DNA from: Macrostomum lignano
Lineage: Eukaryota
Reading direction: 5' to 3'
DNA length: 64,000 nucleotides
Assembly (NCBI GenBank): GCA_002269645.1
Contig: NIVC01002833.1
Span: 1-64,000, forward strand
Shown: piece by piece, positions 13,130 to 43,772 of the stretch
Position numbering within the stretch: the first letter of the stretch is position 1
How the letters are laid out: every line of letters begins with the position of its first letter
The notes under the pieces: generated by a model
Told to the model about the DNA's origin: nothing
Database searches by the model: none
The model's input: the letters and a program-made list of their open reading frames with translations, nothing else
Program-made: the position numbers and the translations under genes

Positions 13130-13575
13130 AGCTTCTAAAAGTACAGAAAAAGTTGAGGGAACGAGTACTAAGAGTACAAGAGTACTTTAAACTACTAAAA
13201 GTACAAAAGCAGCTCAGTGAACAGCTTCTAAAAGTACAACATCAGCTCAGTGAATAACTTCAGCTACTAAAAGTACAACAGCAGCTCAGTGAACAACTTT
13301 CAGCTACTAAAAGTACAAAAGCAGCTCAGTGAATAACTTCAGCTACTAAAAGTACAACAGCAGCTCAGTGAACAACTTTCAGCTACTAAAAGTACAACAG
13401 CAGCTCAGTGAATAACTTCAGCTACTAAAAGTACACAAGCAGCTCGTTGAACAACTTCAGCTACTAAAAGTACAAAAGCAGCTCAGTGAACAACTTCAGC
13501 TACTAAAAGTACAAAAGCAGCTCAGTGAATAACTTCAGCTACTAAAAGTACAAAAGCAGCTCGGAGAGGACTACA
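13130..13575. repeat. ~39-bp minisatellite
   Basis: CAGCTACTAAAAGTACAACAGCAGCTCAGTGAATAACTT units. Confidence 0.9.
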
Positions 13576-13733
13576 GCTAAAAGTATTTCTGATTAAAAGT
13601 TCTGATAAAAATTTGCCAATTAAATAAAAAGAGTTCGAGGTTAAAATAAGTCAATCAGATTTGCAAATTCTTCTTCGTCTCGAAGCTTGAGAGTCAACAC
13701 TTGATACGACCGATTTAAGCCTCATAGCAGTAC

Positions 13734-16700
13734 TCAGTCTGCAATGGAACAGGGCTGCAAGTTTTTGCAAAAGAAGACAGAAGAAGATGTTTAAAAAACG
13801 CAGCTCACGCTGGGGTCGGCCGGCTTGGCAGCAGCTGACCGCTCCGCGGCCCCTCTGGCAGCGGCGCCGGCTGTTCCCGACCGCTTCAGCACCGCGGCAG
13901 CCACTGCGAGACCCACAGCTGCCAGTGCCACCGCCAGCAAGCAGCAGAGCACGACACGGGTCAACGCGCTGACGTCAACAGATGGCGACGAGCCTATAAT
14001 TCTGATGCTGGCTGAAAAGTACAAAGCGCACTTCTTTTTAAGCCTCGATTCAGCGATTTGAGTAGGAGTCGGCTTATTCGCAAAGCAACTCACGACACAC
14101 GGCTCGAAGGGTCTTTGAGCTCTCTGCTGGTGGAAGCAGACCCTGGCTGATGAGACACGTGACAGTGACCTCGGAATGACGCTCCGCGAACCTGTGCAAC
14201 AGCCGAGATCGTTGAATCCAGCCTCCACTGCTGCCTATGAAATCTGGCTCTGGAATGAGCTGTGGAATGAGCACAGGCCACAGTTTGGCAGATCTCCGTA
14301 ATTAATCACTCGGCATCAACTCGGCATCTCATCGTGAGATTCCAGATGCTGACAGTCTCAGTTCTCAGGGAGCAGTGCAGCTCTGGCTTGGGGATTCCCT
14401 CATCAGTGTGCAGTGTTAGGTTCAAGTGCGAACCATTGAATTGTTGATCAAACCAGCGGATTGATCTGGAAGGGACTGCGGACAAATTAAGCAGGCATGT
14501 GCAGTTTAGTGCACAGATACTAGATACTGAATAACTAGATGGGCCACTCAGCACATTTGCGTGTAAGCTACTTTCAGTTCAGTAGTAAGTTAAACAGAAG
14601 CATTTTAATGTATTATTAAAGCCACGGCTTATTTATTGGCTCTAACCCTCCCCCCAGCTTAAACCCTCCAACCGCGCCTTTCCACACTACCCCCTCCCCG
14701 CCCTAATTTTTATTGCCCTTCTCGGAATTCCAAAAGCTGCCATGTACATTTCAGTGGACTTGTGTACATTATTGCTGAACCAATTAGCAAGCTGTTTGCG
14801 CCTGTAAGCATTGGGCTTCTAAACCTATCAAAGTCATTTTAGCTGCCTTTTTTATAAAATAGCTTATGTATTCTTCGTTGCTACTGAACTGAAAGTAGAA
14901 AGCTGTTTTACTAAGCATATCCAGTTATCTTAGTATCACGAACTCACGAACACTGCTGATGGCCTCCCAGTTACTGATTTGGAGTAGTTGAGCAGTCTCT
15001 CGTTGAGTGCCATCCTGACAGGCCCGTCGGCAATGCAGAGTCGCCAAGTGGACTTGCCAAGTCACTGTGAAAGCCTTCAAAACCAAGGTGTCGTCTGTTG
15101 TGTTGCTCTGGAAACACATTCAAAGAATGAGTCTAGCCCAAAAATACATTAAAATGCTTCTATTCAACTTTCTACTGAACTGCAAGTAGTCAAAGATTTT
15201 AAGTTTGCGCTTACCCTGCCAAGTCCAATACTGAAACCGTTGCACATGATTAATCTGCAGTTTGATGCAGAGGCAGGCGAACTGCTGCAGATTCTCGGTA
15301 GCCAAGCCCTGATCAGCAGATTGTCATTCAGCTTCAGATGGAACAAGGCGTTGATTGAGCAGCCGTTGCTCTGCAGCTTGCAGAAGTGGACTGAAAAAAA
15401 GCAGAGCAAGAGCTGTCTGCTAAAGGTGATTCTAATCTGGCAAATTTTCCATCAGAAACTCTCTCACCTTCTTCAATTCCCAGCAGCCGGAAGGTCACGA
15501 ACTTGTCAGTTTGATTGGCCACAAACTTTCTTAGTAGCAGAAATTGAGGAAGCTGGAATGAAGTGTTGAGACGCTGCGGATTCTGAAACTGATGGAGCCT
15601 AACTAGGGGTGTTCGGGGTTCGGGGTCGGGTCGGGTTTCGGGTCGGGTTTCGGGTCGGGTTTTTGTACCGGGTTCGGGGTTCGGGGTAGGGTGTTCGGGT
15701 CGGGTATCGGGTCGGGTTTAGGGTCGGGTTTTCGGGGTTTTCGGGTTCAAAGGAAAAATAAACTTTTTAAAAATAAATTTCTCCTAGCCGTTATGTAACG
15801 CTTTTAAGCATAAAAAGGCAAATATTTAAACTTCGAAAATAATGCTTGAATTGTGGTTTTCAATTACAAATTTAAGGTTTTAACGGATGAAATCTATGAA
15901 TCTATGGATTCTGGCTGGCCGCTGGACTATGCTTGTGGATTTCAAAAATCCCTTTATTTTTAATTGCATACATTTTTATTAAACACATGAATCAAAGATT
16001 TAAGGTTGTTCAACCTTTATTTTCCAATTCCTCATTAAGCTACCCTCGAATGTTGCGCTAACAATGACAACTGAAACCCAAGTTGGTAAACATTTGGATA
16101 AGTGGATGTTAAAGTCAATGCTAAGATCTTAAGTATGAGGAGTCAAATTATAGAGAGGAGAGGAGTGAGGACTTGAGATTGCCAGCTGATGACTAGAAAT
16201 AGGAGTTAAGGAGCCAGGACTGCAAATGAGAACGAGACACAGACTGCTAGAGGTACCTCAGGACGAGCAACTCCCTTCAGTCGTCACTCTTGGAAAAAAT
16301 ATCATCACGGAAAGCCTGAGATGAAGGGTTCTCCTTTCAGGGAAAGTTCGGGTTTCGGTCCGGGTCAGTGTTTCGGGTTCGGGGTTTACCCCGGGATTTA
16401 AAAATGGAAACCCGAACACCCCAAAGCCTAACCAAATATGAAAAGTGGCGAACCTCGGGATCGGTCCAGTCTGGGCAGGCCACTCTGTAGGTTAAATCTG
16501 AATTTCTCGAATTTTTCGTGAAGCCGCACAGGTGAAATCCAGTCAGATTAGGATTAAAACTCGCTGTGCAGTCATGCGGATGCTCAACCAGACCTGCTGG
16601 CATGTGGTGGCTGAGCAGCACTTCAATGCTCAGTGCTCTGGCTCTCTCGGATGCAAAATTTGCTGGAAAATATCAAACAATGGCACTGTTGCAGTGTTGC

Positions 16701-17844
16701 ATCAGTTTTAGTGAGGTTTTTTATAGAAGTCTTTGGAGTTTTATAGAGTCAACGTCGGCCTCAAAAATGAAAGGTCGGGGGTTCGATTCTCTATCCAACT
16801 CAGAACAATTTGTGGCTTTGACGCATGATGCAAGACGCATAACTTCTGCATTTGCTTCAGTTCACCCAGCTGTAAAATGGGTGCCAGCATTAGCTGGGGT
16901 AATTGAGGGTGAGTGTGGCGACCCCCTAGTCATTGGACTGAACAGCCGTACGCAGCCTTCAGATGCGCCGCGCAATAGCTGCGGCTGAGCTGTCGGTTGC
17001 ACATCTGCAGATGCTACTCACGGTTCTTCCTGCCATAGACAACGACGGAGCGCACTCGAACTCTCTGCTTCAACTTCAGCAGCAGCCATTGGTAGCCAAA
17101 TGAGTCCGGAGTCCCGCTCGTGTGGAAATACTCCCAACGATCTGATCTGACAGACGAATGGCGGAAGCAGCTGGCTCCGGGCTGATGGGACATGTAATAG
17201 GAAGATTGCCAGGCTTGCAGAAAATCGTTTGACGAGACGTTGAAGCAAAAGCCTGTTGATTTGTTAAAACATTTTTGTAGCTTAACGGATTTAGTCTTGT
17301 CAAATGTTTTCAAATAGGGCACCGGCTACGCCAGCACCAGGGGCGCCAGCACCAGGGGCGCCAAAGCTACTGCAAGGAGTTGCCAAAGGTACTGCAAGGA
17401 GGTGCCAAAGGTACTGCATGGAGGCGCCAAAGCTACTGCATGGAGGTGCCAAAGCTACTGCAAGGAGTTGCCAAAGGTACTGCAAGGAGGTGCCAAAGGT
17501 ACTGCATGGAGGCGCCAAAGCTACTGCATGGAGGTGCCAAAGCTACTGCATGGAGGCGCCAAAGCTACTGCATGGAGGTGCCAAAGCTACTGCATGGAGG
17601 TGCCAAAGCTACTGCATGGAGGCGCCAAAGCTACTGCATGGAGGCGCCAAAGCTACTGCATGGAGGCGCCAAAGCTACTGCATGGAGGCGCCAAAGCTAC
17701 TGCATGGAGGCGCCAAAGCTACTGCATGGAGGCGCCAAAGCAAAGTCAAGAGCAGAGCAGAAAAAAAGCAGAAAAAAGCAAAGTCTCACAGCCGCAGTTG
17801 GTGCAGCAGAAGCACAGAAGCAGCAGTTTCAGATGAAGAGCCAT
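13734..17844 (-). CDS. Type I membrane protein: signal peptide, F-type-lectin (FTP)-like domain, 2-3 Ig-like domains, TM; exon 3 interrupted by a hAT element
   Basis: Exons 17844-17790 (MALHLKLLLLCFCCTNCG), 17213-17022 (WQSSYY...YFHTSGTPDSFGYQWLLLKLKQRVRVRSVVVYGRKN), 16662-16433 plus 15603-15468, 15390-15215, 15107-14948, 14526-14354 (LNCTC..SIRWF..LHC), 14259-14094 (VTVTCLISQ), 14011-13809 (TM VVLCCLLAVALAAVGLAVAAAVL) and 13754-13734. Without the insertion this is 1512 nt (503 aa), phase-consistent with no internal stop. Domain calls are by motif resemblance only. Confidence 0.7.
15604..16424. mobile_element. Non-autonomous hAT-family DNA transposon (MITE-like), 821 bp
   Basis: 14-bp terminal inverted repeats TAGGGGTGTTCGGG / CCCGAACACCCCAA (1 mismatch). 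Perfect 8-bp target-site duplication AGCCTAAC at 15596-15603 and 16425-16432. Subterminal TCGGG/CGGGT repeats. A possible decayed dimerisation-domain remnant (TYPNVYQL...SATFEGS) lies on the minus strand near 16040-16110. Confidence 0.9.
16745..17005 (+). mobile_element. tRNA-derived SINE, probably 5'-truncated, in intron 2 of the lectin-Ig gene
   Basis: B-box GGTTCGATTC near 16780, followed by CAGTTCACCCAGCTGTAAAATGGGT, which resembles conserved SINE central domains (CORE/Nin-type). No TSD found. Confidence 0.55.
17325..17740. repeat. 22-bp minisatellite (intron 1 of the lectin-Ig gene)
   Basis: Unit GGCGCCAAAGCTACTGCATGGA. Confidence 0.93.
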
Positions 17845-18284
17845 TACAGATGTCAACAGTCGTTAGTTGAAGAGCTTAACTACGATCGTATTTAAGTGTG
17901 CTGGCAGCGGTTCACCCTGTGCAGCACTAACCGCTGCCAAAAATTGAGGTATTAAGAGCTATAAGCAGTCTTCTATTTAGCAAATAGTCAACCAAATTAA
18001 CTTCAATGTAAACAAGTTACCAGATTTGTCAACTATTAAAATTTCACACGACCCAGTTGCATGCTTTGGAATTCGACAAACAAAGCGAAGAGTAAATCGG
18101 TCAGCAAAATTTAGCACTGATCGATGTTTGATTTATCCGATGTGGCTCACTCAGCGTTTAACGGTTTTTAAATTTCTTAGAGTCTACACTACTGAAAGTA
18201 GGCAGATTAGAAAGCCGTAATAGCTTAATGCTTTGGGATCGCCAGAATGGGGCTAAAAGCTGAGCGGGCTGTAGCAGCAATCAC

Positions 18285-18665
18285 TGAAGTACCCGATGAA
18301 GGCTGTAGCAATACCCACTGAAGTACCCGATTAGGGCTGTAGCAATACCCACTGAAGTATCCGATGAAGGCTGTAGCAATACCTACTGAAGTACCCGATG
18401 AAGGCTGTAGCAATATACCTACTGAAGTACTCGATGGAGGCTGTAGCAATACCTACTGAAGTACCCGATGAAGGCTGTAGCAATACCTACTGAAGTACTC
18501 GATGGAGGCTGTAGCAATACCTACTGAAGTACCCGATGAAGGCTGTAGCAATACCTACTGAAGTACTCGATGGAGGCTGTAGCAATACCTACTGAAGTAC
18601 CCGATGAATGCTGTAGCAATACCTACTGTAGTACCCGATGAAGGCTGTAGCAATACCTACTGTAC
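18285..18665. repeat. 34-bp minisatellite
   Basis: Unit GAAGTACCCGATGAAGGCTGTAGCAATACCTACT. Confidence 0.92.
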
Positions 18666-18990: not shown

Positions 18991-21900
18991 TCAATAGATG
19001 CTGGTGAAGGCTGGTTCCGCCGCAGCAGAGGACATTTCTGCACCGGCTGTGCTTTGAGGTTTCTGTTGCTCCTGCTGATGCTGAGTAGCTTGCGAGCGCT
19101 GCATACCGGCCAAGATGAAGTGCCGAGTGGCCAGGAGGGCATCTGTGGCAGCCTGCGGGTTGACATGCGATCGGATTGGAATGCCGTGGCACTCACACAG
19201 GGTGCGCAGCTGCCCTGACTTTCTATGCCTTGGTGAGGGTTGGCCCTATAGCTGAGCTCCTCTGAGTGTTCTTCAAGAAATGCCATTAGCGTTCTAGGTG
19301 TGCTCATTGTGCTGTAATAAAATTAAAATACCCAGAAACTCCAAAAATTTCAAGTAATAGCAAAGCCTCCCAGGACCTTCAAAGGACTTCCAGCACCTTC
19401 AAGGACTCCCAACACCTTCAATGACTCCTAACAACATCAAGGACTCCCAACACCTTCAATGACTCCTAACACCTTCAAGGACTCCTAACACCTTCAATGA
19501 CTCCCAACACCTTCACTGACTCCTAACACCTTCAATGACTCCTAACAACTTCAATGACTCCTAACACCTTCAATGACTCCTAACAACTTCAAGGACTCCT
19601 AACACCTTCAAGGACTCCTAACACCTTCAATGACTCCCAACACCTTCAATGACTCCTAACACCTTCAATGACTCCTAACACCTTCAATGACTCCTAACAC
19701 CTTCAAGGACTCCTAACACCTTCAAGGACTCCTAACACCTTCAATGACTCCCAACACCTTCAATGACTCCTAACAACTTCAAGGACTCCTAACACCTTCA
19801 AGGACTCCTAACACCTTCAAGGACTCCTAACAACTTCAAGGACTCCTAACAACTTCAAGGACTCCCAACACCTTCACTGACTCCTAACACCTTCAATGAC
19901 TCCCAACACCTTCAATGACTACCAACACTTTCACTGACTCCTAACACCTTCAATGACTCCTAACAACTTCAATGACTCCTAACACCTTCAAGGACTCCTA
20001 ACACCTTCAAGGACTCCTAACACCTTCAAGGACTCTAACACCTTCAAGGACTCCTAACACCTTCAAGGACTCCTAACACCTTCAAGGACTCCTAACACCT
20101 TCAATGACTCCCAACACCTTCAATGACTCCTAACACCTTCAATGACTCCTAACACCTTCAATGACTCCTAACACCTTCAATGACTCCTAACACCTTCAAG
20201 GACTCCTAACACCTTCAATGACTCCCAACACCTTCAAGGACTCCTAACACCTTCAAGGACTCCTAACACCTTCAAGGACTCCTAACACCTTCAATGACTC
20301 CTAACACCTTCAAGGACTCCTAACACCTTCAATGACTCCTAACACCTTCAAGGACTCCTAACAACTTCAAGGACTCCTAACGACTTCAAGGACTCCTAAC
20401 ACCTTCAAGGACTCCTAACACCTTCAAGGACTCCTAACACTTTCAAGGACTCCTAACACCTTCAAGGACTCCTAACACCTTCAAGGACTCCTAACACCTT
20501 CAAGGACTCCTAACACCTTCAAGGACTCCTAACACCTTCAAGGACTCCTAACACCTTCAAGGACTCCTAACACCTTCAAGGACTCCTAACACCTTCAATG
20601 ACTCCTAACACCTTCAAGGACTCCTAACACCTTCAAGGACTCCTAACACCTTCAAGGACTCCTAACACCTCCAAGGACTCCCAACACCTCCAAGGACTCC
20701 CCCAAAGTCTTCATCTCTCATCGCCTCACCCGCAGCCTCCGTCTGGCATTGAACTCTCGCAATTTGTTCTGCGCCTCAGCCAGGCTGTCCTCTCGAGCAG
20801 CCAGCCCGCCAACCCACGGATGTCGGAGCGCCTGCCCAGCAGTCAGGCGAGCGTCGGCGTCCAGCACCAGTAGCCTCTCGATGAGGTCGCGCGCGTTCTT
20901 GGAGATGCCCGACCACCAGCGCTGGTCGAATGTGTACTGGGCACGCAGGATTCGACGGTACATGTCGCTGTCATTGTCCGCGTAAAACGGTTCGTAGCCT
21001 CCGAGGCTTTGGAGTGACGAAAGTGGATGGAGAAGACATGGGTGAGTGAAGTGAGGGGGTGTACGGGGTTAGGTGGGTGTAGGGTGAGGTGGGTGTAGGG
21101 GTGGGGTGGGTGTAGGGGTGAGGTGGGTGTAGGGTTGAGGTGGGTTTAGGGGTGAGGTGGGTGTAGGGGTGAGGTGGGTTTAGGGGTGAGGTGGGTGTAG
21201 GAGTGAGGTGGGTGTAGGGGTGAGGTGGGTGTAGGGGTTGAGGTGGGTGTAGGGGGTGAGGTGGGTGTAGGGGTGAGGTGCGTTTAGGGGTGAGGTGGGT
21301 TTAGGGGTGAGGTGGGTGTAGAGGTTAGGTGGGTGTAGGGTAAGGTGGGTGTAGGAGTGAGGTGGGTGTAGGGGTGAGGTGGGTGTAGGGTGAGGTGGGT
21401 GTAGGAGTGAGGTGGGTGTAGGGGTGAGGTGGGTGTAGGGTTGAGGTGGGTGTAGGGGTGAGGTGGGTGTAGGGTTGAGGTGGGTGTAGGGGTGAGGTGG
21501 GTGTAGGGGTGAGGTGGGTGTAGGGGTGAGGTGGGTGTAGGGTTGAGGTGGGTGTAGGGGTGAGGTGGGTGTAGGGGGGGAGGTGGGTGTAGGAGGGAGG
21601 TGGGTGTAGGGGTGAGGTGGGTGTAGGGGGTGAGGTGGGTTAGGGGTGAGGTGGGTCTAGGGGTGAGGTGGGTCTAGGGGTGAGGTGGGTGTAGGGGTGA
21701 GGTAGGTGTAGGGGTGAGGTGGTGTAGGGGGTGAGGTGGTGTAGGGGGGAGGTGGTTGTAGGGGGGAGGTGGGTGTAGGGGGGAGGTGGGTGTAGGGGGG
21801 AGGTGGGTGTAGGGAGTGACCTGGGTGTAGGGAATGAGGTCAATTAACTCGATACAAATAGCAATTACCAACAGAAAGTAAATTAGTAAAAACAAATAAC

Positions 21901-24900
21901 TTTTATTCAATAATATTGCATGATAAAACAAAAAAGTCTTATTAATGTAATCCAAGTTTAATAAATCCAAACCACCATTCAAGTGACTGCTGAAAATTAT
22001 AGTGCACCATTATGAGCAATATACGGTCATAAAAGTATCCCTGACTTTTTTGCGTCCCCATTGATATCCACACAAGGCCTGCGTTTGCCAACTATCGGGA
22101 AACGATCTCCATTCACTGCTATGAAAGGCGGAAGGCGCGTGAAGGCTGGTTGCTTAGCAACTAATCAAGTCAATTTGGTTTCTCTCAATAGGCAAATACG
22201 AGGTACTTGACTTAATTATATTATGCTTATAGATATGGAATCTCAATCAAGTGAGTAGCCTGCCACTAGCTTGGCATGGAAAATGATTAAAAACCGCTGA
22301 ATGATCGTATTTTTCTCACAGATCCTCGGTTGCTAGGCCAGCCTCCCAGATCCTCAGTTGCTGGGCCAGCCTCCCAGATCCTCAGTTGCTGGGCCAGCCT
22401 TCCAGATCCTCAGTTGCTGGGCCAGCCTCCCAGATCCTCAGTTGCTGGGCCAGCCTCTCAGATCCTCAGTTGCTGGGCCAGCCTCCCAGATCCTCAGTTG
22501 CTGGGCCAGCCTCCTAGATCCTCAGTTGCTGGGCTAGCCTCCCAGATCCTCAGTTGCTGGGCCAGCCTCCCAGATCCTCAGTTGCTGAGCCAGCCTCCTA
22601 GATCCCCAGTTGCTGAGCCAGCCTCCCAGATCCCCAGTTGCTATGACAGCCTCCCAGATCCTCAGTTGCTGGGCCAGCCTCCCAGATCCTCAGTTGCTGG
22701 GCCAGCCTCCCAGATCCCCAGTTGCTGGGCCAGCCTCCCAGATCCTCAGTTGCTGGGCCAGCCTCCCAGATCCTCAGTTGCTGGGCCAGCCTCTCAGATC
22801 CTCAGTTGCTGGGCCAGCCTCCCAGATCCTCAGTTGCTGGGCCAGCCTCTCAGATCCTCAGTTGCTGGGCCAGCCTCCCAGATCCTCAGTTGCTGGGCCA
22901 GCCTCCTAGATTCTCAGTTGCTATGCCAGCCTCTCAGATCCTCAGTTGCTGGGCCAGCCTCCCAGATCCTCAGTTGCTGGGCCAGCCTCTCAGATCCTCA
23001 GTTGCTGGGCCAGCCTCCCAGATCCTCAGTTGCTGGGCCAGCCTCCTAGATTCTCAGTTGCTATGCCAGCCTCCCAGATCCTTAGTTGCTGGGCCACCTC
23101 CAAGATCCTCAGTTGCTGGGCCAGCCTCCCAGATCTTCAGTTGCTGGGCCAGCCTCCCAGATCCCCAGTTGCTGAGCCAGCCTCCCAGATCCTCAGTTGC
23201 TAGGCTAGCCTCCTAGATCCTCAGTTGCTGGGCCAGCCTCTCAGATCCTCAGTTGCTGGGCCAGCCTCCCAGATCCCCAGTTGCTGAGCCAGCCTCCCAG
23301 ATCCCAGTTGCTGAGCCAGCCTCCCAGATCCTCAGTTGCTAGGCTAGCCTCCTAGATCCTCAGTTGCTGGGCCAGCCTCCCAGATCCTCAGTTGCTGGGC
23401 CAGCCTCCCAGATCCCCAGTTGCTGAGCCAGCCTCCCAGATCCCCAGTTGCTATGCCAGCCTCCCAGATCCTCAGTTGATGGGCCAGCCTCCCAGATCCT
23501 CAGTTGCTGGGCCAGCCTCTCAGATCCTCAGTTGCTGGGCCAGCCTCCCAGTTCCTCAGTTGCTGGGCCAGCCTCTCAGATCCTCAGTTGCTGGGCCAGC
23601 CTCCCAGATCCTCAGTTGCTGGGCCAGCCTCTCAGATCCTCAGTTGCTGGGCCAGCCTCCCAGATCCCCAGTTGCTATGCCAGCCTCCCAGATCCCCAGT
23701 TGCTATGCCAGCCTCCCAGATCCTCAGTTGCTGGGCCAGCCTCTCAGATCCTCAGTTGCTGGGCTAGCCTCCCAGATCCTCAGTTGCTGGGCTAGCCTCC
23801 CAGATCCTCAGTTGCTGGACCAGCCTCCCAGATCCTCAGTTGCTAGGCTAGCTTCCTAGATCCTCAGTTGCTGGGCCAGCCTCCCAGATCTTCAGTTGCT
23901 GGGCCAGCCTCCCAGATCCCCAGTTGCTGAGCCAGCCTCCCAGATCCTCAGTTGCTAGGCTAGCCTCCTAGATCCTCAGTTGCTGGGCCAGCCTCCCAGA
24001 TCCTCAGTTGCTGGGCCAGCCTCCCAGATCCTCAGTTGCTGGGCCAGCCTCTCAGATCCTCAGTTGCTGGGCCAGCCTCCTAGATTCTCAGTTGCTATGC
24101 CAGCCTCCCAGATCCTTAGTTGCTGGGCCACCTCCAAGATCCTCAGTTGCTGGGCCAGCCTCCCAGATCTTCAGTTGCTGGGCCAGCCTCCCAGATCCCC
24201 AGTTGCTGAGCCAGCCTCCCAGATCCTCAGTTGCTAGGCTAGCCTCCTAGATCCTCAGTTGCTGGGCCAGCCTCTCAGATCCTCAGTTGCTGGGCCAGCC
24301 TCCCAGATCCCCAGTTGCTGAGCCAGCCTCCCAGATCCCCAGTTGCTGAGCCAGCCTCCCAGATCCTCAGTTGCTAGGCTAGCCTCCTAGATCCTCAGTT
24401 GCTGGGCCAGCCTCCCAGATCCTCAGTTGCTGGGCCAGCCTCCCAGATCCCCAGTTGCTGAGCCAGCCTCCCAGATCCCCAGTTGCTATGCCAGCCTCCC
24501 AGATCCTCAGTTGCTGGGCCAGCCTCCCAGATCCTCAGTTGCTGGGCCAGCCTCCAGATCCTCAGTTGCTGGGCCAGCCTCCCAGATCCTCAGTTGCTGG
24601 GCCAGCCTCTCAGATCCTCAGTTGCTGGGCCAGCCTCCCAGATCCCCAGTTGCTATGCCAGCCTCCCAGATCCCCAGTTGCTGGGCCAGCCTCCCAGATC
24701 CCCAGTTGCTGGGCTAGCCTCCCAGATCCTCAGTTGCTGGGCCAGCCTCCCAGATCCCCAGTTTCTGGGCCAGCCTCCCAGATCCACAGTTGCTGGGCTA
24801 GCCTCCCAGATCCTCAGTTGCTGGGCCAGCCTCCCAGATCCCCAGTTGCTGGGCCAGCCTCCTAGATTCTCAGTTGCTATGCCAGCCTCCCAGATCCTCA

Positions 24901-27900
24901 GTTGCTGGGCCAGCCTCCCAGATCCCCAGTTGCTGGGCCAGCCTCCCAGATCCTCAGTTGCTGGGCTAGCCTCCCAGATCCTCAGTTGCTGGGCCAGCCT
25001 CCCAGATCCCCAGTTGCTGGGCCAGCCTCCTAGATTCTCAGTTGCTATGCCAGCCTCCCAGATCCTCAGTTGCTGGGCCAGCCTCCCAGATCCCCAGTTG
25101 CTATGCCAGCCTCCCAGATCCTCAGTTGCTGGGCCAGCCTCCCAGATCCTCAGTTGCTGGGCCAGCCTCCCAGATCCCAGTTGCTGGGCCAGCCTCCCAG
25201 ATCCCCAGTTGCTATGCCAGCCTCCCAGATCCTCAGTTGCTGGGCCAGCCTCCCAGATCCTCAGTTGCTGGGCCAGCCTCCCAGATCCTCAGTTGCTGGG
25301 CCAGCCTCCCAGATCCCCAGTTGCTATGCCAGCCTCCCAGATCCTTAGTTGCTGGGCCACCTCCAAGATCCTCAGTTGCTGGGCCAGCCTCCCAGATCCT
25401 CAGTTGCTGGGCCAGCCTCCCAGATCCCAGTTGCTGGCCAGCCTCCCAGATCCTCAGTTGCTGGGCCAGCCTCCCAGATCCCAGTTGCTGGGCCAGCCTC
25501 CAGATCCTCAGTTGCTGGGCCAGCCTCCCAGATCCTCAGTTGCTGGGCCAGCCTCCAGATCCTCAGTTGCTGGGCCAGCCTCCCAGATCCTCAGTTGCTG
25601 GGCCAGCCTCCCAGATCCTCAGTTGCTGGGCCAGCCTCCAGATCTCAGTTGCTATGCCAGCCTCCCAGATCCTCAGTTGCTGGGCCACCTCCAGATCCTC
25701 AGTTGCTGGGCCAGCCTCCCAGATCCTCAGTTGCTGGGCCAGCCTCCCAGATCCCAGTTGCTGAGCCAGCCTCCCAGATCCTCAGTTGCTAGGCAGCCTC
25801 CTAGATCCTCAGTTGCTGGGCTAGCCTCCCAGATCCTCAGTTGCTGGGCCAGCCTCCCAGATCCTCAGTTGCTGAGCCAGCCTCCTAGATCCCCAGTTGC
25901 TGAGCCAGCCTCCCAGATCCCCAGTTGCTATGCCAGCCTCCCAGATCCTCAGTTGCTGGGCCAGCCTCCCAGATCCTCAGTTGCTGAGCCAGCCTCCCAG
26001 ATCCCCAGTTGCTGGGCCAGCCTCCCAGATCCTCAGTTGCTGGGCCAGCCTCCCAGATCCTCAGTTGCTGGGCCAGCCTCTAGATCCTCAGTTGCTGGGC
26101 CAGCCTCCCAGATCCTCAGTTGCTGGGCCAGCCTCTCAGATCCTCAGTTGCTGGGCCAGCCTCCCAGATCCTCAGTTGCTGGGCCAGCCTCCTAGATTCT
26201 CAGTTGCTATGCCAGCCTCCCAGATCCTTAGTTGCTGGGCCAGCCTCCAGATCCTCAGTTGCTGAGCCAGCCTCCCAGATCTTCAGTTGCTGGGCCAGCC
26301 TCCCAGATCCCCAGTTGCTGAGCCAGCCTCCCAGATCCTCAGTTGCTAGGCCAGCCTCCCAGATCCTCAGTTGTTGGGCCAGCCTCTCAGATCCTCAGTT
26401 GCTGGGCCAGCCTCCCAGATCCCCAGTTGCTGAGCCAGCCTCCCAGATCCCCAGTTGCTGAGCCAGCCTCCCAGATCCTCAGTTGCTAGGCTAGCCTCCT
26501 AGATCCTCAGTTGCTGGGCCAGCCTCCCAGATCCTCAGTTGCTGGGCCAGCCTCCCAGATCCCCAGTTGCTGAGCCAGCCTCCCAGATCCCCAGTTGCTA
26601 TGCCAGCCTCCCAGATCCTCAGTTGCTGGGCCAGCCTCCCAGATCCTCAGTTGCTGGGCCAGCCTCCCAGATCCTCAGTTGCTGGGCTAGCCTCCCAGAT
26701 CCTCAGTTGCTGGGCTAGCCTCCCAGATCCTCAGTTGCTGGACCAGCCTCCCAGATCCTCAGTTGCTAGGCTAGCTTCCTAGATCCTCAGTTGCTGGGCC
26801 AGCCTCCCAGATCTTCAGTTGCTGGGCCAGCCTCCCAGATCCCCAGTTGCTGAGCCAGCCTCCCAGATCCTCAGTTGCTAGGCTAGCCTCCTAGATCCTC
26901 AGTTGCTGGGCCAGCCTCTCAGATCCTCAGTTGCTGGGCCAGCCTCCCAGATCCTTAGTTGCTGGGCCACCTCCAAGATCCTCAGTTGCTGGGCCAGCCT
27001 CCCAGATCTCAGTTGCTGGGCCAGCCTCCCAGATCCCAGTTGCTGGCCAGCCTCCCAGATCCTCAGTTGCTGGCTAGCCTCCTAGATCCTCAGTTGCTGG
27101 GCCAGCCTCCAGATCCTCAGTTGCTGGGCCAGCCTCCCAGATCCCCAGTTGCTGAGCCAGCCTCCCAGATCCCCAGTTGCTGAGCCAGCCTCCCAGATCC
27201 TCAGTTGCTAGGCTAGCCTCCTAGATCCTCAGTTGCTGGGCCAGCCTCCCAGATCCTCAGTTGCTGGGCCAGCCTCCCAGATCCCCAGTTGCTGAGCCAG
27301 CCTCCCAGATCCCCAGTTGCTATGCCAGCCTCCCAGATCCTCAGTTGCTGGGCTAGCCTCCCAGATCCTCAGTTGCTGGGCCAGCCTCCCAGATCCCCAG
27401 TTGCTGGGCCAGCCTCCCAGATCCTCAGTTGCTGGGCCAGCCTCCCAGATCCTCAGTTGCTGGGCCAGCCTCCCAGATTCCCAGTTGCTGGGCCAGCCTC
27501 CTAGATTCTCAGTTGCTGGGCCAGCCTCCCAGATCCTCAGTTGCTGGGCCAGCCTCCCAGATCCTCAGTTGCTGGGCCAGCCTCCCAGATCCTCAGTTGC
27601 TGGGCCAGCCTCCCAGATCCTCAGTTGCTGGGCCAGCCTCCCAGATCCCAGTTGCTGGGCCAGCCTCCTAGATCCAGTTGCTGGGCCAGCCTCCAGATCC
27701 TCAGTTGCTGGGCCAGCCTCTCAGATCCTCAGTTGCTGGGCCAGCCTCCCAGATCCTCAGTTGCTGGGCCAGCCTCTCAGATCCTCAGTTGCTGGGCCAG
27801 CCTCCCAGATCCTCAGTTGCTGGGCCAGCCTCCCAGATCCTCAGTTGCTGGGCCAGCCTCCAGATCCTCAGTTGCTGGGCCAGCCTCCCAGATCCTCAGT

Positions 27901-30815
27901 TGCTGGGCCAGCCTCCCAGATCCCCAGTTGCTGGGCCAGCCTCCCAGATCCACAGTTGCTGGGCTAGCCTCCCAGATCCTCAGTTGCTGGGCCAGCCTCC
28001 CAGATCCCAGTTGCTGGGCCAGCCTCCCAGATCCAGTTGCTATGCTGGGCAGCCTCCCAGATCCTCAGTTGCTGGGCCAGCCTCCCAGATCCCAGTTGCT
28101 GGGCCAGTTGCTCAGGGCCAGCCTCTCAGTTGCTGGCCATCCTCAGTTGCTGGCTGCCAGCCTCTCAGATTTTCAGTTGCTGCTCCACTACCTTTGACAC
28201 TGGGCTCAACCGACCTCATGTTCACTCGCATTTAAAGAATAAAAACACATCTCGCACAGAAAATGCCTATACAAAAGTCATGAGAAATTTTTTTCGCCCT
28301 AAGTCTCAACGATTATTCGTTCCACGCTCTCACATATTCGTTTCTAAGTCTTATTCTCCAGCTCTCTCTGTTTTATTGCCGCAGCAAAATGCAAATACAG
28401 CAGTGACTCGCTCTAAAACAAACTGAACCGGCCAGCAGTCGGCAACTTCAATCTTTATGTGAAGCTGTGTGGGCCTTTGTTTCTAAATTTAGCCTTAAAA
28501 GTTGGGGAGCTAATGTTAATTAATGGTACTCTATTATTGCTCCTTAGTATACCTCACATGCTTAAAGTAGTGCAATTAGCCATCATAATGCTACAAATTA
28601 GCTTGATTGCGTGAAATAATACCGAAGTAGTCATGAATTAAATCTCTAGCTCTACATGCTAGCATTGCGCACTATACCGACAATATGCACAATTTAGTCT
28701 AATTAGGCACTCCTAGCAGTGTTGCATCGATATTTAAATCCCAATAGTACACCACTTCACTCTCCCCACTTCATACCCACCTCATTCCCCAACCCTACAC
28801 CCACCTCATTCCCCAACTTTACACCCACCTCATTCCCCAACTTTACACCCACCTCACTCCCCAACTTTACACCCACCTCACTCCCCAACTTTACACCCAC
28901 CTCACGTCCTCACTCCCCAACCCTACACTCACCTCACTCTCCAACTTTACACCCACCTCACTCCCCAACTTTACACCCACCTCACTCCCCAACTTTACAC
29001 CCACCTCACGTCCTCACTCCCCAACCCTACACTCACCTCACTCTCCAACTTTACACCCACCTCACTCCCCAACTTTACACCCACCTCACTCCCCAACTTT
29101 ACACCCACCTCACGTCCTCACTCCCCAACCCTACACTCACCTCACTCTCCAACTTTACACCCACCTCACTCTCCAACTTTACACCCACCTCACTCCCCAA
29201 CTTTACACCCACCTCACTCCCCAACTTTACACCCACCTCACTCTCCAACCCTACACCCACCTCACTCCTCTACCCTACTCTACAGCCTCCAACAGCCACA
29301 TAGCCGCTTACAGAATAAAAGCAATGACTCCAACGCTCCACATGTCCATGGCGGTGCCACAGCCTCTGCGCAGCAGAACCTCAGGCGCACAATAGCCCGG
29401 AGTACCGCACACAGATCTCGTATGCACGTCAGAGTCGGCAATTTTGCTCAAACCGAAATCAGCTAAGGAAAGGAAGTGTTGAAAAGTGAAAATTTAGAAC
29501 TTTAAAATCATTATTGAAACGAGCGTATCCAATATGGTTATTTGCAACTCACCAATTTTCAATTTGGCCTCTTCGCGTTCGTCTTCGTAAAGCAAATTCT
29601 CCGGCTAAAATCAAATGGGACCAAGTTTTCATATTCAGTAGGGGCGTTTGGTGTGTATTGTAACTTTCATGCAGTTAGAAACCTTGAGATCGCGATGAAT
29701 AATGCCCCGCTCGTGCAGATACCTCAAGCCGTCTAGCAATTGTCCAAAGCATTGGGACGCGTCTTTCTCGTTGTAACTGCCGCGACTGACAATTCTGTAA
29801 GTTTAGTCACGGAAAGCAGCTGTCATTTGTTGGCTAAAAGAGTTTTATCATTTCCAATCATTAGTTCCAGCCCATAAAGATATTACATGATCGTCCAATT
29901 CAAGCGCGCAAATACTGTACTCGTACGCAGACACTCTCTGTGCCTTGAGCCTTTCTTCTGTTCAGAAATCAGAAATTAAATTAAATTTAGATGAGAATGG
30001 GCCCAAGACAAATATGTTATCTGTTTTCCTACAAAGCTTCACAAAGTACAAAACCTTACCTGTCAAACAGTTCCCCACCTGTGACCAATTCCAGGACCAT
30101 GAAGAAATGATTTGGCGTTTCAAACACTTCCTTTAATCTAATCTGTTGGAGGTAGTTTAAATCAAAGTTTTTTTAGATAAGCTGTTCTTAGACAGAAAAT
30201 CTATTACATTTTTTAGCAAATATGAAGTGGCTCACAATATTTTCATGACTGACACTGAACAGGATACCAATCTCAGCTGTTACTATTCTCTTATCCACCT
30301 GGATAAAAAGTAATGTTTTTGATTTTTCAAATAAAACAGGAAAGTTGACTATAATTTATGTTCTTAGTGAATATACTTTAACCTGGCAAACTATACTCAC
30401 CTTCTTTTGTATCACTTTTGCTGCCCATTTTTCACTTGAGCCAATTCTGTTGCACTCATGCACAACAGATGTTCCACCCCTTTAATGTGAATTTTTTAAG
30501 TTTATATTATGTAAAGTTGTAGCAACAATAAAATAAATTTTATCTCAAAAAATTATTTTAAGGAAAAAAATACAATATACATTTGTTCAATGAATTTATT
30601 GGCAGTAGGGATCCTCAAAAATTGTCCATGTAACACACTTTAAATCTTTATTTACTGAATTTAACCACTATTAATATCACCACTGTGTGCTTATGTTGTT
30701 GATTAAAGTTGATCACTCAATGTATAACTTACTTTCCCAATTCCTTTCCTAAGTCGTAAACGTCTTCAAAACGAATGTCTTTGATGCTTTCATACAGCCA
30801 ATAGTCCGAGTTCAT
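18991..30815 (-). CDS. CAMK4: Ca2+/calmodulin-dependent protein kinase, CaMKIV/CaMKI family, 353 aa
   Basis: Exons 30815-30733, 30479-30401, 30298-30236, 30142-30060, 29794-29683, 29604-29553, 29462-29312, 21006-20730, 19152-18991 total 1062 nt and are open. Motifs: [71 protein letters not shown], and the autoregulatory [14 protein letters not shown]. The symbol reflects family resemblance. Confidence 0.93.
19370..20700. repeat. 19-bp minisatellite, about 70 copies (last kinase intron)
   Basis: Unit TCCTAACACCTTCAAGGAC. Confidence 0.95.
21050..21830. repeat. 17-bp G-rich minisatellite
   Basis: Unit GGGGTGAGGTGGGTGTA. Confidence 0.93.
22318..28190. repeat. 28-bp satellite, about 210 copies, with ~1034-bp higher-order structure
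   Basis: Unit CAGTTGCTGGGCCAGCCTCCCAGATCCT. Identical variant blocks sit 1034 bp apart (ORF track 22946-23203 vs 23980-24237). Confidence 0.97.
28765..29280. repeat. 24-bp C-rich minisatellite
   Basis: Unit ACTTTACACCCACCTCACTCCCCA. Confidence 0.93.
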
Positions 30816-42700: not shown

Positions 42701-43772
42701 GCAAAAGTGCGGCCGATTCCGCTGCGCAAGGGAATTCGAAGGTTTGTAGAAAACTCAATCCTTGGCTTAAGGATTAAGGATCATTGGGCATTTGGCTAAT
42801 GGGTCAGTGAGCTACTTGATTGGTCATTGAGTTCATTGGTCATTGAGTTGATTGGTCATTGAGTTGATTGGTCATTGAGTTGATTGGTCATTGAGTTGAT
42901 TGGTCATTGAGTTGATTGCTCATTGAGTTGATTGGTCATTGAGTTGATTGGTCATTGAGTTGATTGGTCATTGAGTTGATTGGTCATTGAGTTGATTGGT
43001 CATTGAGTTCATTGTTCATTGAGTTGATTGGTCATTGAGTTTATTGGTCATTGAGTTCATTGGTCATTGAGTTCATTGGTCATTGAGTTTATTAGTCATT
43101 GAGTTGATTGTTCATTGAGTTTATTGGTCATTGAGTTTATTGGTCATTGAGTATATTGGTCATTGAGTTGATTGGTCATTGAGTTGATTGGTCATTGAGT
43201 TGATTGGTCATTGAGTTGATTGGTCATTGAGTATATTGGTCATTGAGTTCATTGGTCATTGAGTTTATTGGTCATTGAGTTTATTAGTCATTGAGTTGAT
43301 TGGTCATTGAGTTGATTGGTCATTGAGTTGATTGGTCATTGAGTTGATTGGTCATTGAGTTGATTGGTCATTGAGTTGATTGGTCATTCAGCTGATTGGT
43401 CATTCATTTGATAGGTCATAAAGTTAAGTTTTCACCGAGTTGTTTAAACAACCAAGTTATATCCCAGAATGTGTGCAATCTACCTATATCTCTGTGCAGA
43501 GGAACTGCTGCACCTGTTGCCATCTGCTGTTTTCTGGCTCGCCCAACACGGCATCATCTGAGGCCGCCTTGTGCCCTTCCTCAGAGAAAAATATTTGTCA
43601 TCAGATGCAGCCAGAGCCCGTGACTTCCGGGTTCGCTGTAACCGACTGCAACACTCCCGTGGGCCTCTGCATGAGACCCCTGCCCAGTGACAGCATCGCC
43701 TCCTCTGCTGACTGCTCTGTTGCCACCGATGTCACCCGGCTGTAGAGCTGAGGCAGACAGACAGACAGACAC

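What the first reader, a model, noticed from the sequence alone, without database searches (positions are those of the whole stretch)
13734..17844. Hidden F-type lectin plus Ig-like type I membrane receptor
Seen: nine short exons, none obvious as a single ORF, chain in phase into 503 aa with a signal peptide, a TM helix and a short tail. The first domain follows the F-type lectin pattern (QSS..HT..W..L..V.V..R), but the fucose motif HX26RXDX4R appears here as H-X30-R-K-N-X6-R and the Ca-binding DG is absent. Later segments show Ig-like C...W...C spacing. Known: molluscan FREP/CREP/GREP proteins pair IgSF domains with fibrinogen, C-type lectin or galectin domains. Inference: FTP+Ig+TM would be another lectin-Ig pairing and a candidate pattern-recognition or adhesion receptor.
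Basis: partly seen in the sequence, partly recalled or inferred. Interest (0 to 1): 0.8.

Follow-up and report, generated by a model that had tools for sequence, protein, structure and literature searches.

The report
Flatworm lectin-like membrane receptor gene
The region holds a real split gene, most likely from a Macrostomum flatworm, for a cell-surface protein with a divergent fucose-lectin-type head, a cysteine-rich module, one probable antibody-like domain and a membrane anchor; its relatives are so far only unnamed predicted proteins.

Summary
On the minus strand, 9-10 short exons (17844 down to 13791 or 13715) chain in phase into a 474-502 aa type I membrane protein. Exons 2-6 are confirmed by tblastn with Macrostomum lignano paralogues (E down to 4e-17), and exon 7 by a repeat-unit profile (E 1.5e-5). 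Intron positions and phases match a paralogous gene.

A profile of the N-terminal domain hits only two sequences in the whole PDB, both F-type lectins (FBP32 at E 1.4e-5, eel agglutinin at 0.071). The His/Arg/Arg triad columns are conserved.

Ig evidence is weak but consistent: the repeat profile hits only Ig-type domains, best E 1.4e-3. It covers one domain (exons 7-8). Exons 5-6 are a 6-Cys module with no known relative.

The exon 7/8 junction is unresolved: the most consensus-like donor breaks the frame and would give a protein without a membrane anchor. A pseudogene or a secreted form therefore stays possible.

Function as a glycan-binding adhesion or recognition receptor is inferred, not shown. 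It is a new variant of a known kind, of moderate interest.

The parts
17790..17844 (-). Exon 1: start ATG (17844-17842) and signal-peptide-like MALHLKLLLLCFCCTNCG. Donor T|GTGAGA, phase 1.
   Evidence: An in-frame stop lies 7 codons upstream. The paralogue P0004 also has a phase-1 intron right after its signal peptide.
17022..17252 (-). Exon 2: first half of the F-type-lectin-like domain (WQSS ... YFH ... YQWLLLKL ... VRSVVVYGRKN).
   Evidence: tblastn with P0001/2/3/7, E 2e-12 to 2e-14. phmmer against 1.84 billion representative proteins. Pfam F5_F8_type_C below threshold, E 9e-4 to 4e-3.
16454..16662 (-). Exon 3: middle of the lectin-like domain (ERARALSIEVLL ... CG ... C). Donor GAG|GTTCGC is atypical; an alternative donor TTG|GTTAGG lies at 16433.
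   Evidence: tblastn with P0003, E 4e-17. The intron position matches P0004 intron 3. The C-x7-LP spacing of the homologues favours 16454.
15604..16424 (.). 821-bp hAT-like non-autonomous transposon inside intron 3, flanked by the 8-bp target-site duplication AGCCTAAC (15596-15603 and 16425-16432).
   Evidence: Terminal inverted repeats (TIRs) 15606-15621 / 16407-16422, 16 nt, 94% complementary. The duplication was read. The TIR word is over-represented in the window.
15468..15552 (-). Exon 4: last strands of the lectin-like domain (LPQFLLLRKFVANQTDKFVTFRLLGIEE).
   Evidence: tblastn with P0003/7, E 1e-6 to 5e-10. The acceptor ttccag|CTT corresponds to the P0004 exon 4 start LTRFIL.
15215..15390 (-). 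Exon 5: first half of a cysteine-rich module.
   Evidence: tblastn with P0007 (joint E 5e-10). Six invariant Cys in alignment A7. No PDB relative.
14948..15107 (-). Exon 6: second half of the cysteine-rich module (TVTW ... LHCRRACQDGT).
   Evidence: tblastn with P0003/7, E 6e-8.
14354..14475 (-). Exon 7: first half of the Ig-like unit (LNLTLHTDEGIPKPELHCSL). The 3' end is uncertain: 14354 (ACT|GTCAGC), 14321 (CGA|GTTGAT) or 14313 (GA|GTGATT, which shifts the frame).
   Evidence: The unit HMM built without the window sequence ranks this ORF first of 2286 (E 1.5e-5). The 14354 join fits the HMM end to end (27.4 bits, against 22.3 and 21.1 for the others).
14094..14259 (-). Exon 8: second half of the Ig-like unit (RLLHRFAERHSEVTVTCLISQGLLPP). 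Acceptor ccacag|CTC phase 0; donor C|GTGAGT phase 1.
   Evidence: Same phases as P0004 exon 8. Weak HMM hit in the expected half of the unit (E 1.2, third of 2286 ORF pieces). Pairwise BLASTP is not significant.
13791..14011 (-). Exon 9: stalk, TM helix (13955-13887), KR stop-transfer and Ala-rich tail, with stop TAA at 13793-13791. If the GTGAGC donor at 13808 is used, the exon ends at 13809.
   Evidence: No detectable homology to paralogue tails.
13715..13738 (-). Possible exon 10: TEYCYEA plus stop, reached through a 70-nt intron with a GTGAGC donor, a pyrimidine tract and a CAG acceptor.
   Evidence: Read; model c2. Not tested.

Best explanation
The locus is a genuine protein-coding gene, or a very recently damaged copy of one. 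It belongs to a small family seen so far only in the flatworm Macrostomum lignano.

The encoded protein is type I membrane, about 475-500 aa. In order it has:
- a signal peptide;
- a roughly 170-aa divergent F-type-lectin-like jelly-roll domain (exons 2-4);
- a roughly 110-aa module with six conserved cysteines and an unknown fold (exons 5-6);
- one Ig-like domain (exons 7-8);
- a short stalk, one TM helix and a tail of about 30 residues.

Shown: the exon chain, its homology, the conserved intron positions, the relationship of the head domain to F-type lectins, and conservation of the His/Arg/Arg columns that bind fucose in canonical F-lectins.

Inferred: the head binds a glycan. This need not be fucose, since the loop between the two Arg is 5 residues longer than in its paralogues, the acidic residue is missing and the calcium site is absent. 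The cysteine-rich and Ig-like modules would hold the head away from the membrane. The protein would then act as a cell-surface recognition or adhesion receptor. With its short, motif-poor tail, any signalling would need a partner.
For: Gene model. Homology of exons 2-6: (E to 4e-17). Exon 7: (E 1.5e-5, best of 2286 ORF pieces).

Family: one search found only 6 hits among 1.84 billion representative proteins. Five are from M. lignano and the sixth is a Xenopus fucolectin.

Gene structure: the 13-exon paralogue P0004 has introns at the same positions and phases.

Head domain: the N-domain profile against the whole PDB gives only FBP32 (3CQO, E 1.4e-5) and eel agglutinin (1K12, E 0.071), with H, R and R aligned to the lectin triad. 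MAFFT aligns the whole domain collinearly with Xenopus F-type lectin domains (FTLDs), including the CG...C cysteine pair. The AlphaFold model of paralogue P0001 has pLDDT 60-85 in this domain. Its Foldseek hits are all galactose-binding-domain-like folds and include three F-lectins.

Ig-like unit: the profile hits about 55 PDB sequences, essentially all Ig C-type domains, with both Cys aligned to the canonical pair. P0002 reaches the C2-set_2 cut-off. UniProt names three paralogues 'Ig-like domain-containing protein'.

TM helix.
Against: - Pfam finds no domain above threshold in the window protein.
- hhalign against Xenopus FTLDs gives only 37% probability over 38 columns.
- The structure model's alignment included Xenopus FTLDs, so the fold is not fully independent evidence. 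The Ig part is not confidently modelled.
- Exons 8-9 have no significant pairwise homology.
- Two donor sites (exon 3 GTTCGC; exon 7 GTCAGC or GTTGAT) deviate from the GT[AG]A pattern of all 12 donors of the paralogous gene.
- The best-looking donor of exon 7 (GTGATT) breaks the frame.
- No exact protein model is in the 15-billion-protein collection, so there is no sign that the gene has been annotated or seen as a transcript.
- No binding or expression data exist.
Confidence: 0.62

Rival explanations
1. The copy in this window is a decaying paralogue (pseudogene) of the family. The reading frames are still open, but splicing no longer yields the full membrane protein.
For: All 12 donors of paralogue P0004 are GT[AG]A. 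Here the homology-supported exon 3 donor is GTTCGC. At exon 7, the only consensus-like donor (GTGATT, 14313) shifts the frame and ends the protein at 423 aa. None of the 11 models tried is in the protein collection. The loop between the two Arg of the lectin motif carries a 5-residue insertion found only in this copy.
Against: Every homologous exon is open over its full length. All phases are compatible with the paralogue's. All acceptors and 6 of 8 donors are canonical. In-frame joins exist at both weak sites. A single missing G (GAGGTGATT to GAGTGATT) would explain the exon 7 problem and could be an assembly error.
Confidence: 0.25
2. The main product is a secreted lectin-like protein of 423 aa without a membrane anchor. 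It would be made by using the GTGATT donor at 14313 with the acceptor at 14249.
For: GTGATT resembles a donor used in the paralogue (GTAATC). The resulting frame stays open through exon 8 and stops 14 codons into exon 9.
Against: That frame of exon 8 has no similarity to the family unit. The other frame aligns with the second half of the unit, including the conserved Cys. It also keeps the phase-0 and phase-1 boundaries of P0004 exon 8.
Confidence: 0.1
3. The head is a generic galactose-binding-domain-like module (discoidin, SUN or CBM32 type) used for protein or lipid binding, and is not a lectin of the F type.
For: Foldseek ranks SUN2 and muskelin discoidin domains as high as the F-lectins (E 1e-4 against 1.8e-4). 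The Pfam hits are to F5_F8_type_C and lie below threshold. The calcium motif and the canonical triad spacing are missing (PMC5712786).
Against: At sequence-profile level the only PDB hits are F-type lectins, with the triad residues aligned. The only non-Macrostomum phmmer hit is a fucolectin. H, R and R are invariant across the family.
Confidence: 0.2
4. The exon chain is a chance assembly of short open frames in repeat-rich DNA.
For: The individual exons are short, and the window is full of mini- and microsatellites that create spurious ORFs.
Against: Six consecutive exons match independent flatworm proteins, in order and in frame, at E down to 4e-17. The intron positions are shared with a paralogue.
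Confidence: 0.01

Closest known systems
F-type lectins (eel agglutinin AAA, PDB 1K12; striped-bass FBP32, PDB 3CQO; Xenopus fucolectins)
   Same: These are the only PDB sequences hit by the family profile. The domain is collinear with them: QSS, xHT, WW/QW-L-x-L, V-x-V-x-x-R, R-x-GAE/IE, and the CG...C cysteine pair. His and both Arg of the fucose triad are conserved. The modelled fold is a jelly roll.
   Different: The motif is H-x30-R-K-N-x6-R instead of HX24RXDX4(R/K). There is no acidic residue after the first Arg and no h2DGx calcium motif (PMC5712786). The cysteines in CxHT and LCEVEV are both absent. Known F-lectins are mostly secreted and tandem; this protein has a single head on a membrane-anchored stalk.
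Drosophila furrowed / CG9095 (membrane-bound mosaic FTLD proteins)
   Same: An F-type lectin domain (FTLD) combined with other extracellular modules and a transmembrane segment. The fucose motif is also degenerate in CG9095 (PMC5712786).
   Different: The partner modules there are a C-type lectin domain and CCP repeats. Here they are a novel 6-Cys module and an Ig-like domain. No orthology is indicated.
Macrostomum lignano predicted proteins A0A1I8J6H5 / A0A1I8HXW3, A0A1I8HM06, A0A1I8GPA9 and PAA49974.1 (BOX15_Mlig012130g1)
   Same: They are true homologues, 34-43% identical to one another across the paralogue groups and 53-55% identical to the window's exon 2 for the closest groups, with the same head domain, the same intron positions and the same repeat unit.
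   Different: They carry 2-5 Ig-like units; the window gene has one. PAA49974.1 has a 115-aa tail with ITIM-like and ITSM-like tyrosine motifs, which the window gene lacks. All are uncharacterised, and none is annotated as a lectin.
Siglecs and other lectin-Ig-TM immunoreceptors
   Same: Similar layout: a membrane-distal glycan-binding head, an Ig-type stalk and a single TM. In the paralogue P0004, the tail has an ITIM plus ITSM pair about 27 residues apart (motif consensus from my own knowledge).
   Different: The Siglec head is a V-set Ig domain, not a jelly roll. There is no homology, and the analogy is untested. The window gene's own tail has no such motif.
Snail VIgL proteins (FREP, CREP, GREP)
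   Same: They pair IgSF domains with a lectin-type domain in an invertebrate (PMC10075465).
   Different: VIgLs are secreted, with N-terminal IgSF and a C-terminal fibrinogen, C-type lectin or galectin domain. Here the lectin-like domain is N-terminal and the protein is membrane-anchored. The lineages and domains are unrelated.

Membership tests
F-type lectin family (FTLD) | Significant sequence-profile similarity to known F-type lectin domains | tested here: met
   The family profile (A3) against the whole PDB returns only 3CQO (E 1.4e-5) and 1K12 (E 0.071). A Xenopus fucolectin is the only non-flatworm phmmer hit (E 4e-5). Weaker results: hhalign E 3.6e-4 with probability 37%; Pfam below threshold.
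F-type lectin family (FTLD) | Fucose-binding motif HX24RXDX4(R/K) (PMC5712786) | tested here: not met
   The window protein has H-x30-R-K-N-x6-R. Paralogues have H-x30-R-x5/6-R without the acidic residue. The three basic triad columns themselves are invariant.
F-type lectin family (FTLD) | Calcium-binding motif h2DGx (PMC5712786) | tested here: not met
   No such motif occurs in the window protein or in any paralogue. The segment that holds it in Xenopus FTLDs aligns to a gap or to a shorter CF-containing stretch.
F-type lectin family (FTLD) | F-type jelly-roll fold | tested here: inconclusive
   The AlphaFold model of paralogue P0001 has pLDDT 60-85 in the domain. All Foldseek top hits are galactose-binding-domain-like, with F-lectins at ranks 7, 10 and 16. 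SUN and discoidin domains score equally well.
F-type lectin family (FTLD) | Binding of fucose or fucosylated glycans | not testable with these tools
   Needs a glycan array or ITC with recombinant protein.
Immunoglobulin superfamily domain | Profile similarity to Ig domains, with the two cysteines aligned to the B and F strand pair | tested here: inconclusive
   The unit profile A5 hits about 55 PDB sequences, essentially all Ig C-type domains, but the best E is only 1.4e-3. Pfam C2-set_2 is exactly at its cut-off in paralogue P0002 (21.0 bits). There is no Pfam Ig hit on the window protein.
Immunoglobulin superfamily domain | Cys-Cys spacing of about 40-70 residues, with Trp about 10-15 residues after the first Cys | tested here: inconclusive
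   The Cys-Cys spacing is 40 (join at 14354) or 51 (join at 14321) residues, both within range. The only Trp in the 14354 join lies 19 residues after the first Cys, which is not the canonical position.
Immunoglobulin superfamily domain | Ig beta-sandwich fold | tested here: inconclusive
   Both models predict beta strands throughout, but pLDDT stays below 45 in the repeat units. No fold search was attempted on these parts.
Snail VIgL (FREP/CREP/GREP) | Secreted protein with N-terminal IgSF domain(s) and a C-terminal lectin-type domain (PMC10075465) | tested here: not met
   The order is reversed, with the lectin-like head at the N-terminus, and a TM helix is present.
hAT-superfamily transposon (element in intron 3) | Terminal inverted repeats plus an 8-bp target-site duplication | tested here: met
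   TIRs of 16 nt at 94%. Perfect 8-bp AGCCTAAC on both flanks. There is no transposase ORF, so the element is non-autonomous. No other copy was found in the window or in two M. lignano loci.

The most novel reading that the evidence does not exclude
The Macrostomum family is a flatworm counterpart of Siglec-type immunoreceptors that arose independently. A glycan-binding F-lectin-derived head sits on Ig-like stalks. Long-tailed members (PAA49974.1, with VVYAQV and TEYTEI motifs 27 residues apart) would signal through ITIM/ITSM-SHP phosphatase pathways. Short-tailed members such as the window gene would act as decoy or partner receptors. This would be the first F-type-lectin-headed paired-receptor system.
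Probability: 0.15. Interest if true: 0.7.

Novelty: new variant of a known kind. Interest (0 to 1): 0.4.

Why it matters
F-type lectins are known as mostly secreted fucose binders in immunity and fertilisation. Their distribution among animals is patchy, and their mosaic architectures are few (CCP, C-type lectin, pentraxin, FA58C, TM; PMC5712786). A flatworm-specific family places a strongly diverged F-lectin-like head on a new cysteine-rich module and Ig-like domains at the cell surface. That extends the known architectures.

It also shows that standard domain libraries miss this head entirely: Pfam finds nothing above threshold. M. lignano is a genetically tractable regeneration and reproduction model, so surface-recognition candidates there can be tested by knock-down or knock-out.

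The specific gene in the window adds a short, single-Ig member. It also illustrates how much gene content stays hidden in this satellite-rich genome.

Tried and rejected
I therefore could not check for a near-identical annotated protein or list the family fully.

Only exon 2 could be searched, and only paralogues could be modelled.

3. Exact look-ups of 11 alternative models found nothing.

4. I first thought the hAT element had inserted into a coding exon, because removing the element and one duplication gives an open in-frame read-through. I rejected this. The homologues have exactly 7 residues between the Cys and LPxF, and P0004 has an intron at that position. The element therefore sits in a formerly 72-nt intron.

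5. I first took VHFCKLQSNG as the end of the lectin domain. Alignment with Xenopus FTLDs shows the domain ends at FRLLGIEE, which corresponds to LCEVEVYGE.

6. The idea of a tRNA-derived SINE in intron 2 has no ARAGORN or Rfam support and no second copy.

7. AlphaFold on the full-length paralogue P0004 was unusable, with mean pLDDT 34.9.

8. phmmer of the whole protein against the PDB found nothing. The 6-Cys module profile against the PDB also found nothing.

9. Pairwise BLASTP of exon 8 against P0002 was not significant.

10. There is no paralogue elsewhere in the window, and none next to two M. lignano paralogue loci.

11. There are no Rfam or tRNA hits in the window.

12. A literature search for the M. 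lignano locus tags, and for F-type lectins in Macrostomum, found nothing.


Full report
**What is in the sequence.** The window is eukaryotic and packed with mini- and microsatellites. The feature lies on the minus strand. There is no long ORF, but stop-free pieces in changing frames run from 17862 down to 13794.

I rebuilt a chain of nine exons with AG/GT borders and compatible phases (495 aa). The protein begins MALHLKLLLLCFCC..., with an in-frame stop 7 codons upstream of the ATG at 17844. It ends with a 23-residue hydrophobic helix (13955-13887), then KR and an Ala-rich tail of 31 residues. The motif reading in the finding is exact: QSS, YFH, 30 residues, R-K-N, 6 residues, R, and no DG motif.

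**Is it real?** A phmmer search with exon 2 was the only piece the tool would accept. It found just six proteins with E below 1e-3 among 1.84 billion representatives. Five are predicted proteins of the flatworm Macrostomum lignano. The sixth is a Xenopus tropicalis fucolectin.

Mapped back by tblastn, the flatworm proteins hit exons 2, 3, 4, 5 and 6, in order and in the expected frames, with E down to 4e-17. I built an HMM of the family's repeated unit without the window sequence. It ranks the exon 7 ORF first among all 2286 six-frame ORF pieces of the window (E 1.5e-5). It ranks the exon 8 frame third, matching the second half of the unit (E 1.2).

The gene of paralogue PAA49974.1 (P0004) lies on contig NIVC01003746.1 and has 13 exons. 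Its introns fall at the same places and phases: after the signal peptide, after the first Arg of the lectin motif, before L(T/P)xF, after EIEE, and inside the repeat unit. A chance chain is excluded.

**Source organism.** It is most likely Macrostomum. All close homologues are from M. lignano. The window also shares a 360-bp repeat (87% identity) and a minisatellite family with an M. lignano contig.

**Corrections to the gene model.**
- All homologues have exactly seven residues between a conserved Cys and L(P/T)xF. P0004 has its intron 3 there. Exon 3 therefore most likely ends at 16454 and exon 4 starts at 15552 (ttccag|CTT), not 15582. This shortens the protein by 10-17 residues.
- 'Intron 3' is mostly an 821-bp hAT-like non-autonomous transposon (15604-16424). 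It has 16-nt terminal inverted repeats (TIRs) and a perfect 8-bp target-site duplication. Without the element the intron was 72 nt.
- The exon 7/8 junction is unresolved. The phase-0 join required by homology can use ACT|GTCAGC (14354) or CGA|GTTGAT (14321). The first fits the unit HMM end to end (27.4 bits, against 22.3). The most consensus-like donor, GA|GTGATT (14313), shifts the frame and gives a 423-aa protein without a TM.
- All 12 donors of the paralogous gene are GT[AG]A. The window copy therefore has two atypical donors, at exon 3 (GTTCGC) and at exon 7. One missing G would repair the exon 7 donor, so an assembly error or a recent inactivating mutation is possible.
- A well-formed 70-nt intron may add a tenth exon, TEYCYEA* (13738-13715).
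- None of the 11 models is present in the 15-billion-protein collection.

**The N-terminal domain.** Pfam gives only sub-threshold F5_F8_type_C and F5_F8_type_C_2 hits. A profile of the domain from five family members, searched against every PDB sequence, returns two hits and nothing else: the striped-bass F-lectin FBP32 (3CQO, E 1.4e-5) and eel agglutinin (1K12, E 0.071). The family's invariant His and two Arg align to the lectins' fucose-binding triad.

MAFFT aligns the whole domain collinearly with Xenopus F-type lectin domains (FTLDs), from QSS to (L)xxEhEE, and including the CG...C cysteine pair. hhalign against four Xenopus FTLDs is weak (E 3.6e-4, probability 37%).

AlphaFold could not be run on the spliced protein. 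The full-length paralogue P0004 gave an unusable model (pLDDT 34.9). Paralogue P0001, with a slightly deeper alignment, gave pLDDT 60-85 across the domain. The top Foldseek hits for that model are all galactose-binding-domain-like jelly rolls: SUN, muskelin discoidin, FBP32, eel agglutinin, lectinolysin, APC10 and CBM32. The fold therefore fixes the superfamily, and the sequence profile points to the F type.

Two of the defining F-lectin motifs of Vasta et al. (PMC5712786) are not met. HX24RXDX4(R/K) appears here as H-x30-R-K-N-x6-R, and h2DGx is absent. I therefore call the domain F-type-lectin-like, not a canonical fucolectin.

**The rest of the ectodomain.** Exons 5-6 encode a module of about 110 aa with six invariant cysteines. 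It is shared with two paralogue groups and absent from a third. It has no PDB or Pfam relative. Nothing shows it to be Ig.

Exons 7-8 encode one copy of a unit that is repeated 2-5 times in the paralogues and has two invariant cysteines. The unit profile hits about 55 PDB sequences, essentially all immunoglobulin C-type domains. The cysteines align to the canonical pair, but the best E is only 1.4e-3. One paralogue reaches the Pfam C2-set_2 cut-off, and UniProt labels three paralogues 'Ig-like domain-containing protein'. The models are not confident here. An Ig-like fold is thus likely but not established.

**How it probably works.** This part is inference. The protein would be a type I surface protein whose membrane-distal jelly-roll head binds a carbohydrate through the retained His/Arg/Arg pocket. 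Its specificity is probably altered by the longer loops, the missing acidic residue and the missing calcium site. The 6-Cys and Ig-like modules would act as a stalk. The 30-residue tail has no recognisable motif, so the protein would act in adhesion or recognition, or signal through a partner.

The long paralogue P0004 carries VVYAQV and TEYTEI 27 residues apart at its C-terminus. These match the ITIM and ITSM consensus as I know them. This suggests the family may include inhibitory-type signalling receptors, a Siglec-like layout reached with a different lectin head. It is a lead, not a result.

**Comparison and novelty.** Membrane-anchored mosaic FTLD proteins are known (Drosophila furrowed and CG9095, with CCP and C-type lectin modules). 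Ig domains are not among the usual FTLD partners listed in PMC5712786.

The family itself already exists in databases as uncharacterised flatworm proteins, without any lectin annotation. I rate this a new variant of a known kind, of moderate interest. The main open points are the integrity of this particular copy and the complete lack of functional data.

Noticed in passing
window 15596-16432: An 821-bp hAT-like non-autonomous transposon with 16-nt TIRs (GGGGTGTTCGGGGTTC) and a perfect 8-bp target-site duplication, AGCCTAAC. It carries internal (T)CGGGT(T) 12-mer arrays. It sits 21 nt into what was a 72-nt, stop-free, in-frame intron. No second copy is in the window or in two M. lignano loci.
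   Followed up: yes
L001 (M. lignano NIVC01003746.1) 15511-15966; protein P0004 / PAA49974.1, C-terminus: The long paralogue has a 115-aa cytoplasmic tail ending in VVYAQV (ITIM-like) and TEYTEI (ITSM-like), 27 residues apart. This is the arrangement seen in inhibitory immunoreceptors. The window gene lacks it; its optional last exon reads TEYCYEA.
   Followed up: partly
window 15215-15390 and 14948-15107 (exons 5-6): A module of about 110 aa with six invariant cysteines, shared with the P0003/P0007 and P0004 groups and absent from P0001/P0002. It has no PDB or Pfam relative and may be a new extracellular module.
   Followed up: partly
window ~40370-42780, + strand: Exons of an adhesion-GPCR-like gene: GPS motif (CLCNHLSSFAVVV; Pfam GPS E 1.9e-7) followed by 7tm_2 (E 1.7e-8), interrupted by minisatellites.
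   Followed up: partly
window ~51544-52480, - strand: Exons encoding a CAP/SCP (CRISP-like) domain (Pfam CAP, E 6.5e-12), preceded by a signal-peptide-like ORF.
   Followed up: partly
window 33726-34412, + strand: A 228-aa ATG-initiated ORF with a signal-peptide-like start and many cysteines. It has no Pfam hit and no exact match in the contig collection.
   Followed up: partly
window 22300-28200; also 13192-13562, 17357-17741, 18283-18662 and 19375-20000: Very large minisatellite arrays. The 22.3-28.2 kb array (GC about 60%) belongs to the same repeat family as L001 13334-14286 in M. lignano (about 70% identity). A 22-bp array fills most of intron 1 of the gene.
   Followed up: partly
window 35982-36341: A 360-bp interspersed repeat, 87% identical to M. 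lignano contig NIVC01003746.1 (L001 23525-23881). It supports a Macrostomum origin of the window.
   Followed up: no
protein P0005 (UniRef A0A1I8JA40, M. lignano): This predicted protein fuses a Mab-21-named N-terminal part to a signal peptide plus the first half of the same lectin-like domain. It looks like a chimeric gene model that hides a further family member.
   Followed up: no
window 14313-14322: The sequence GCCGAGTGATT would become a canonical phase-0 donor (GAG|GTGATT) if one G were added. This may be a homopolymer assembly error or a recent 1-nt deletion.
   Followed up: no
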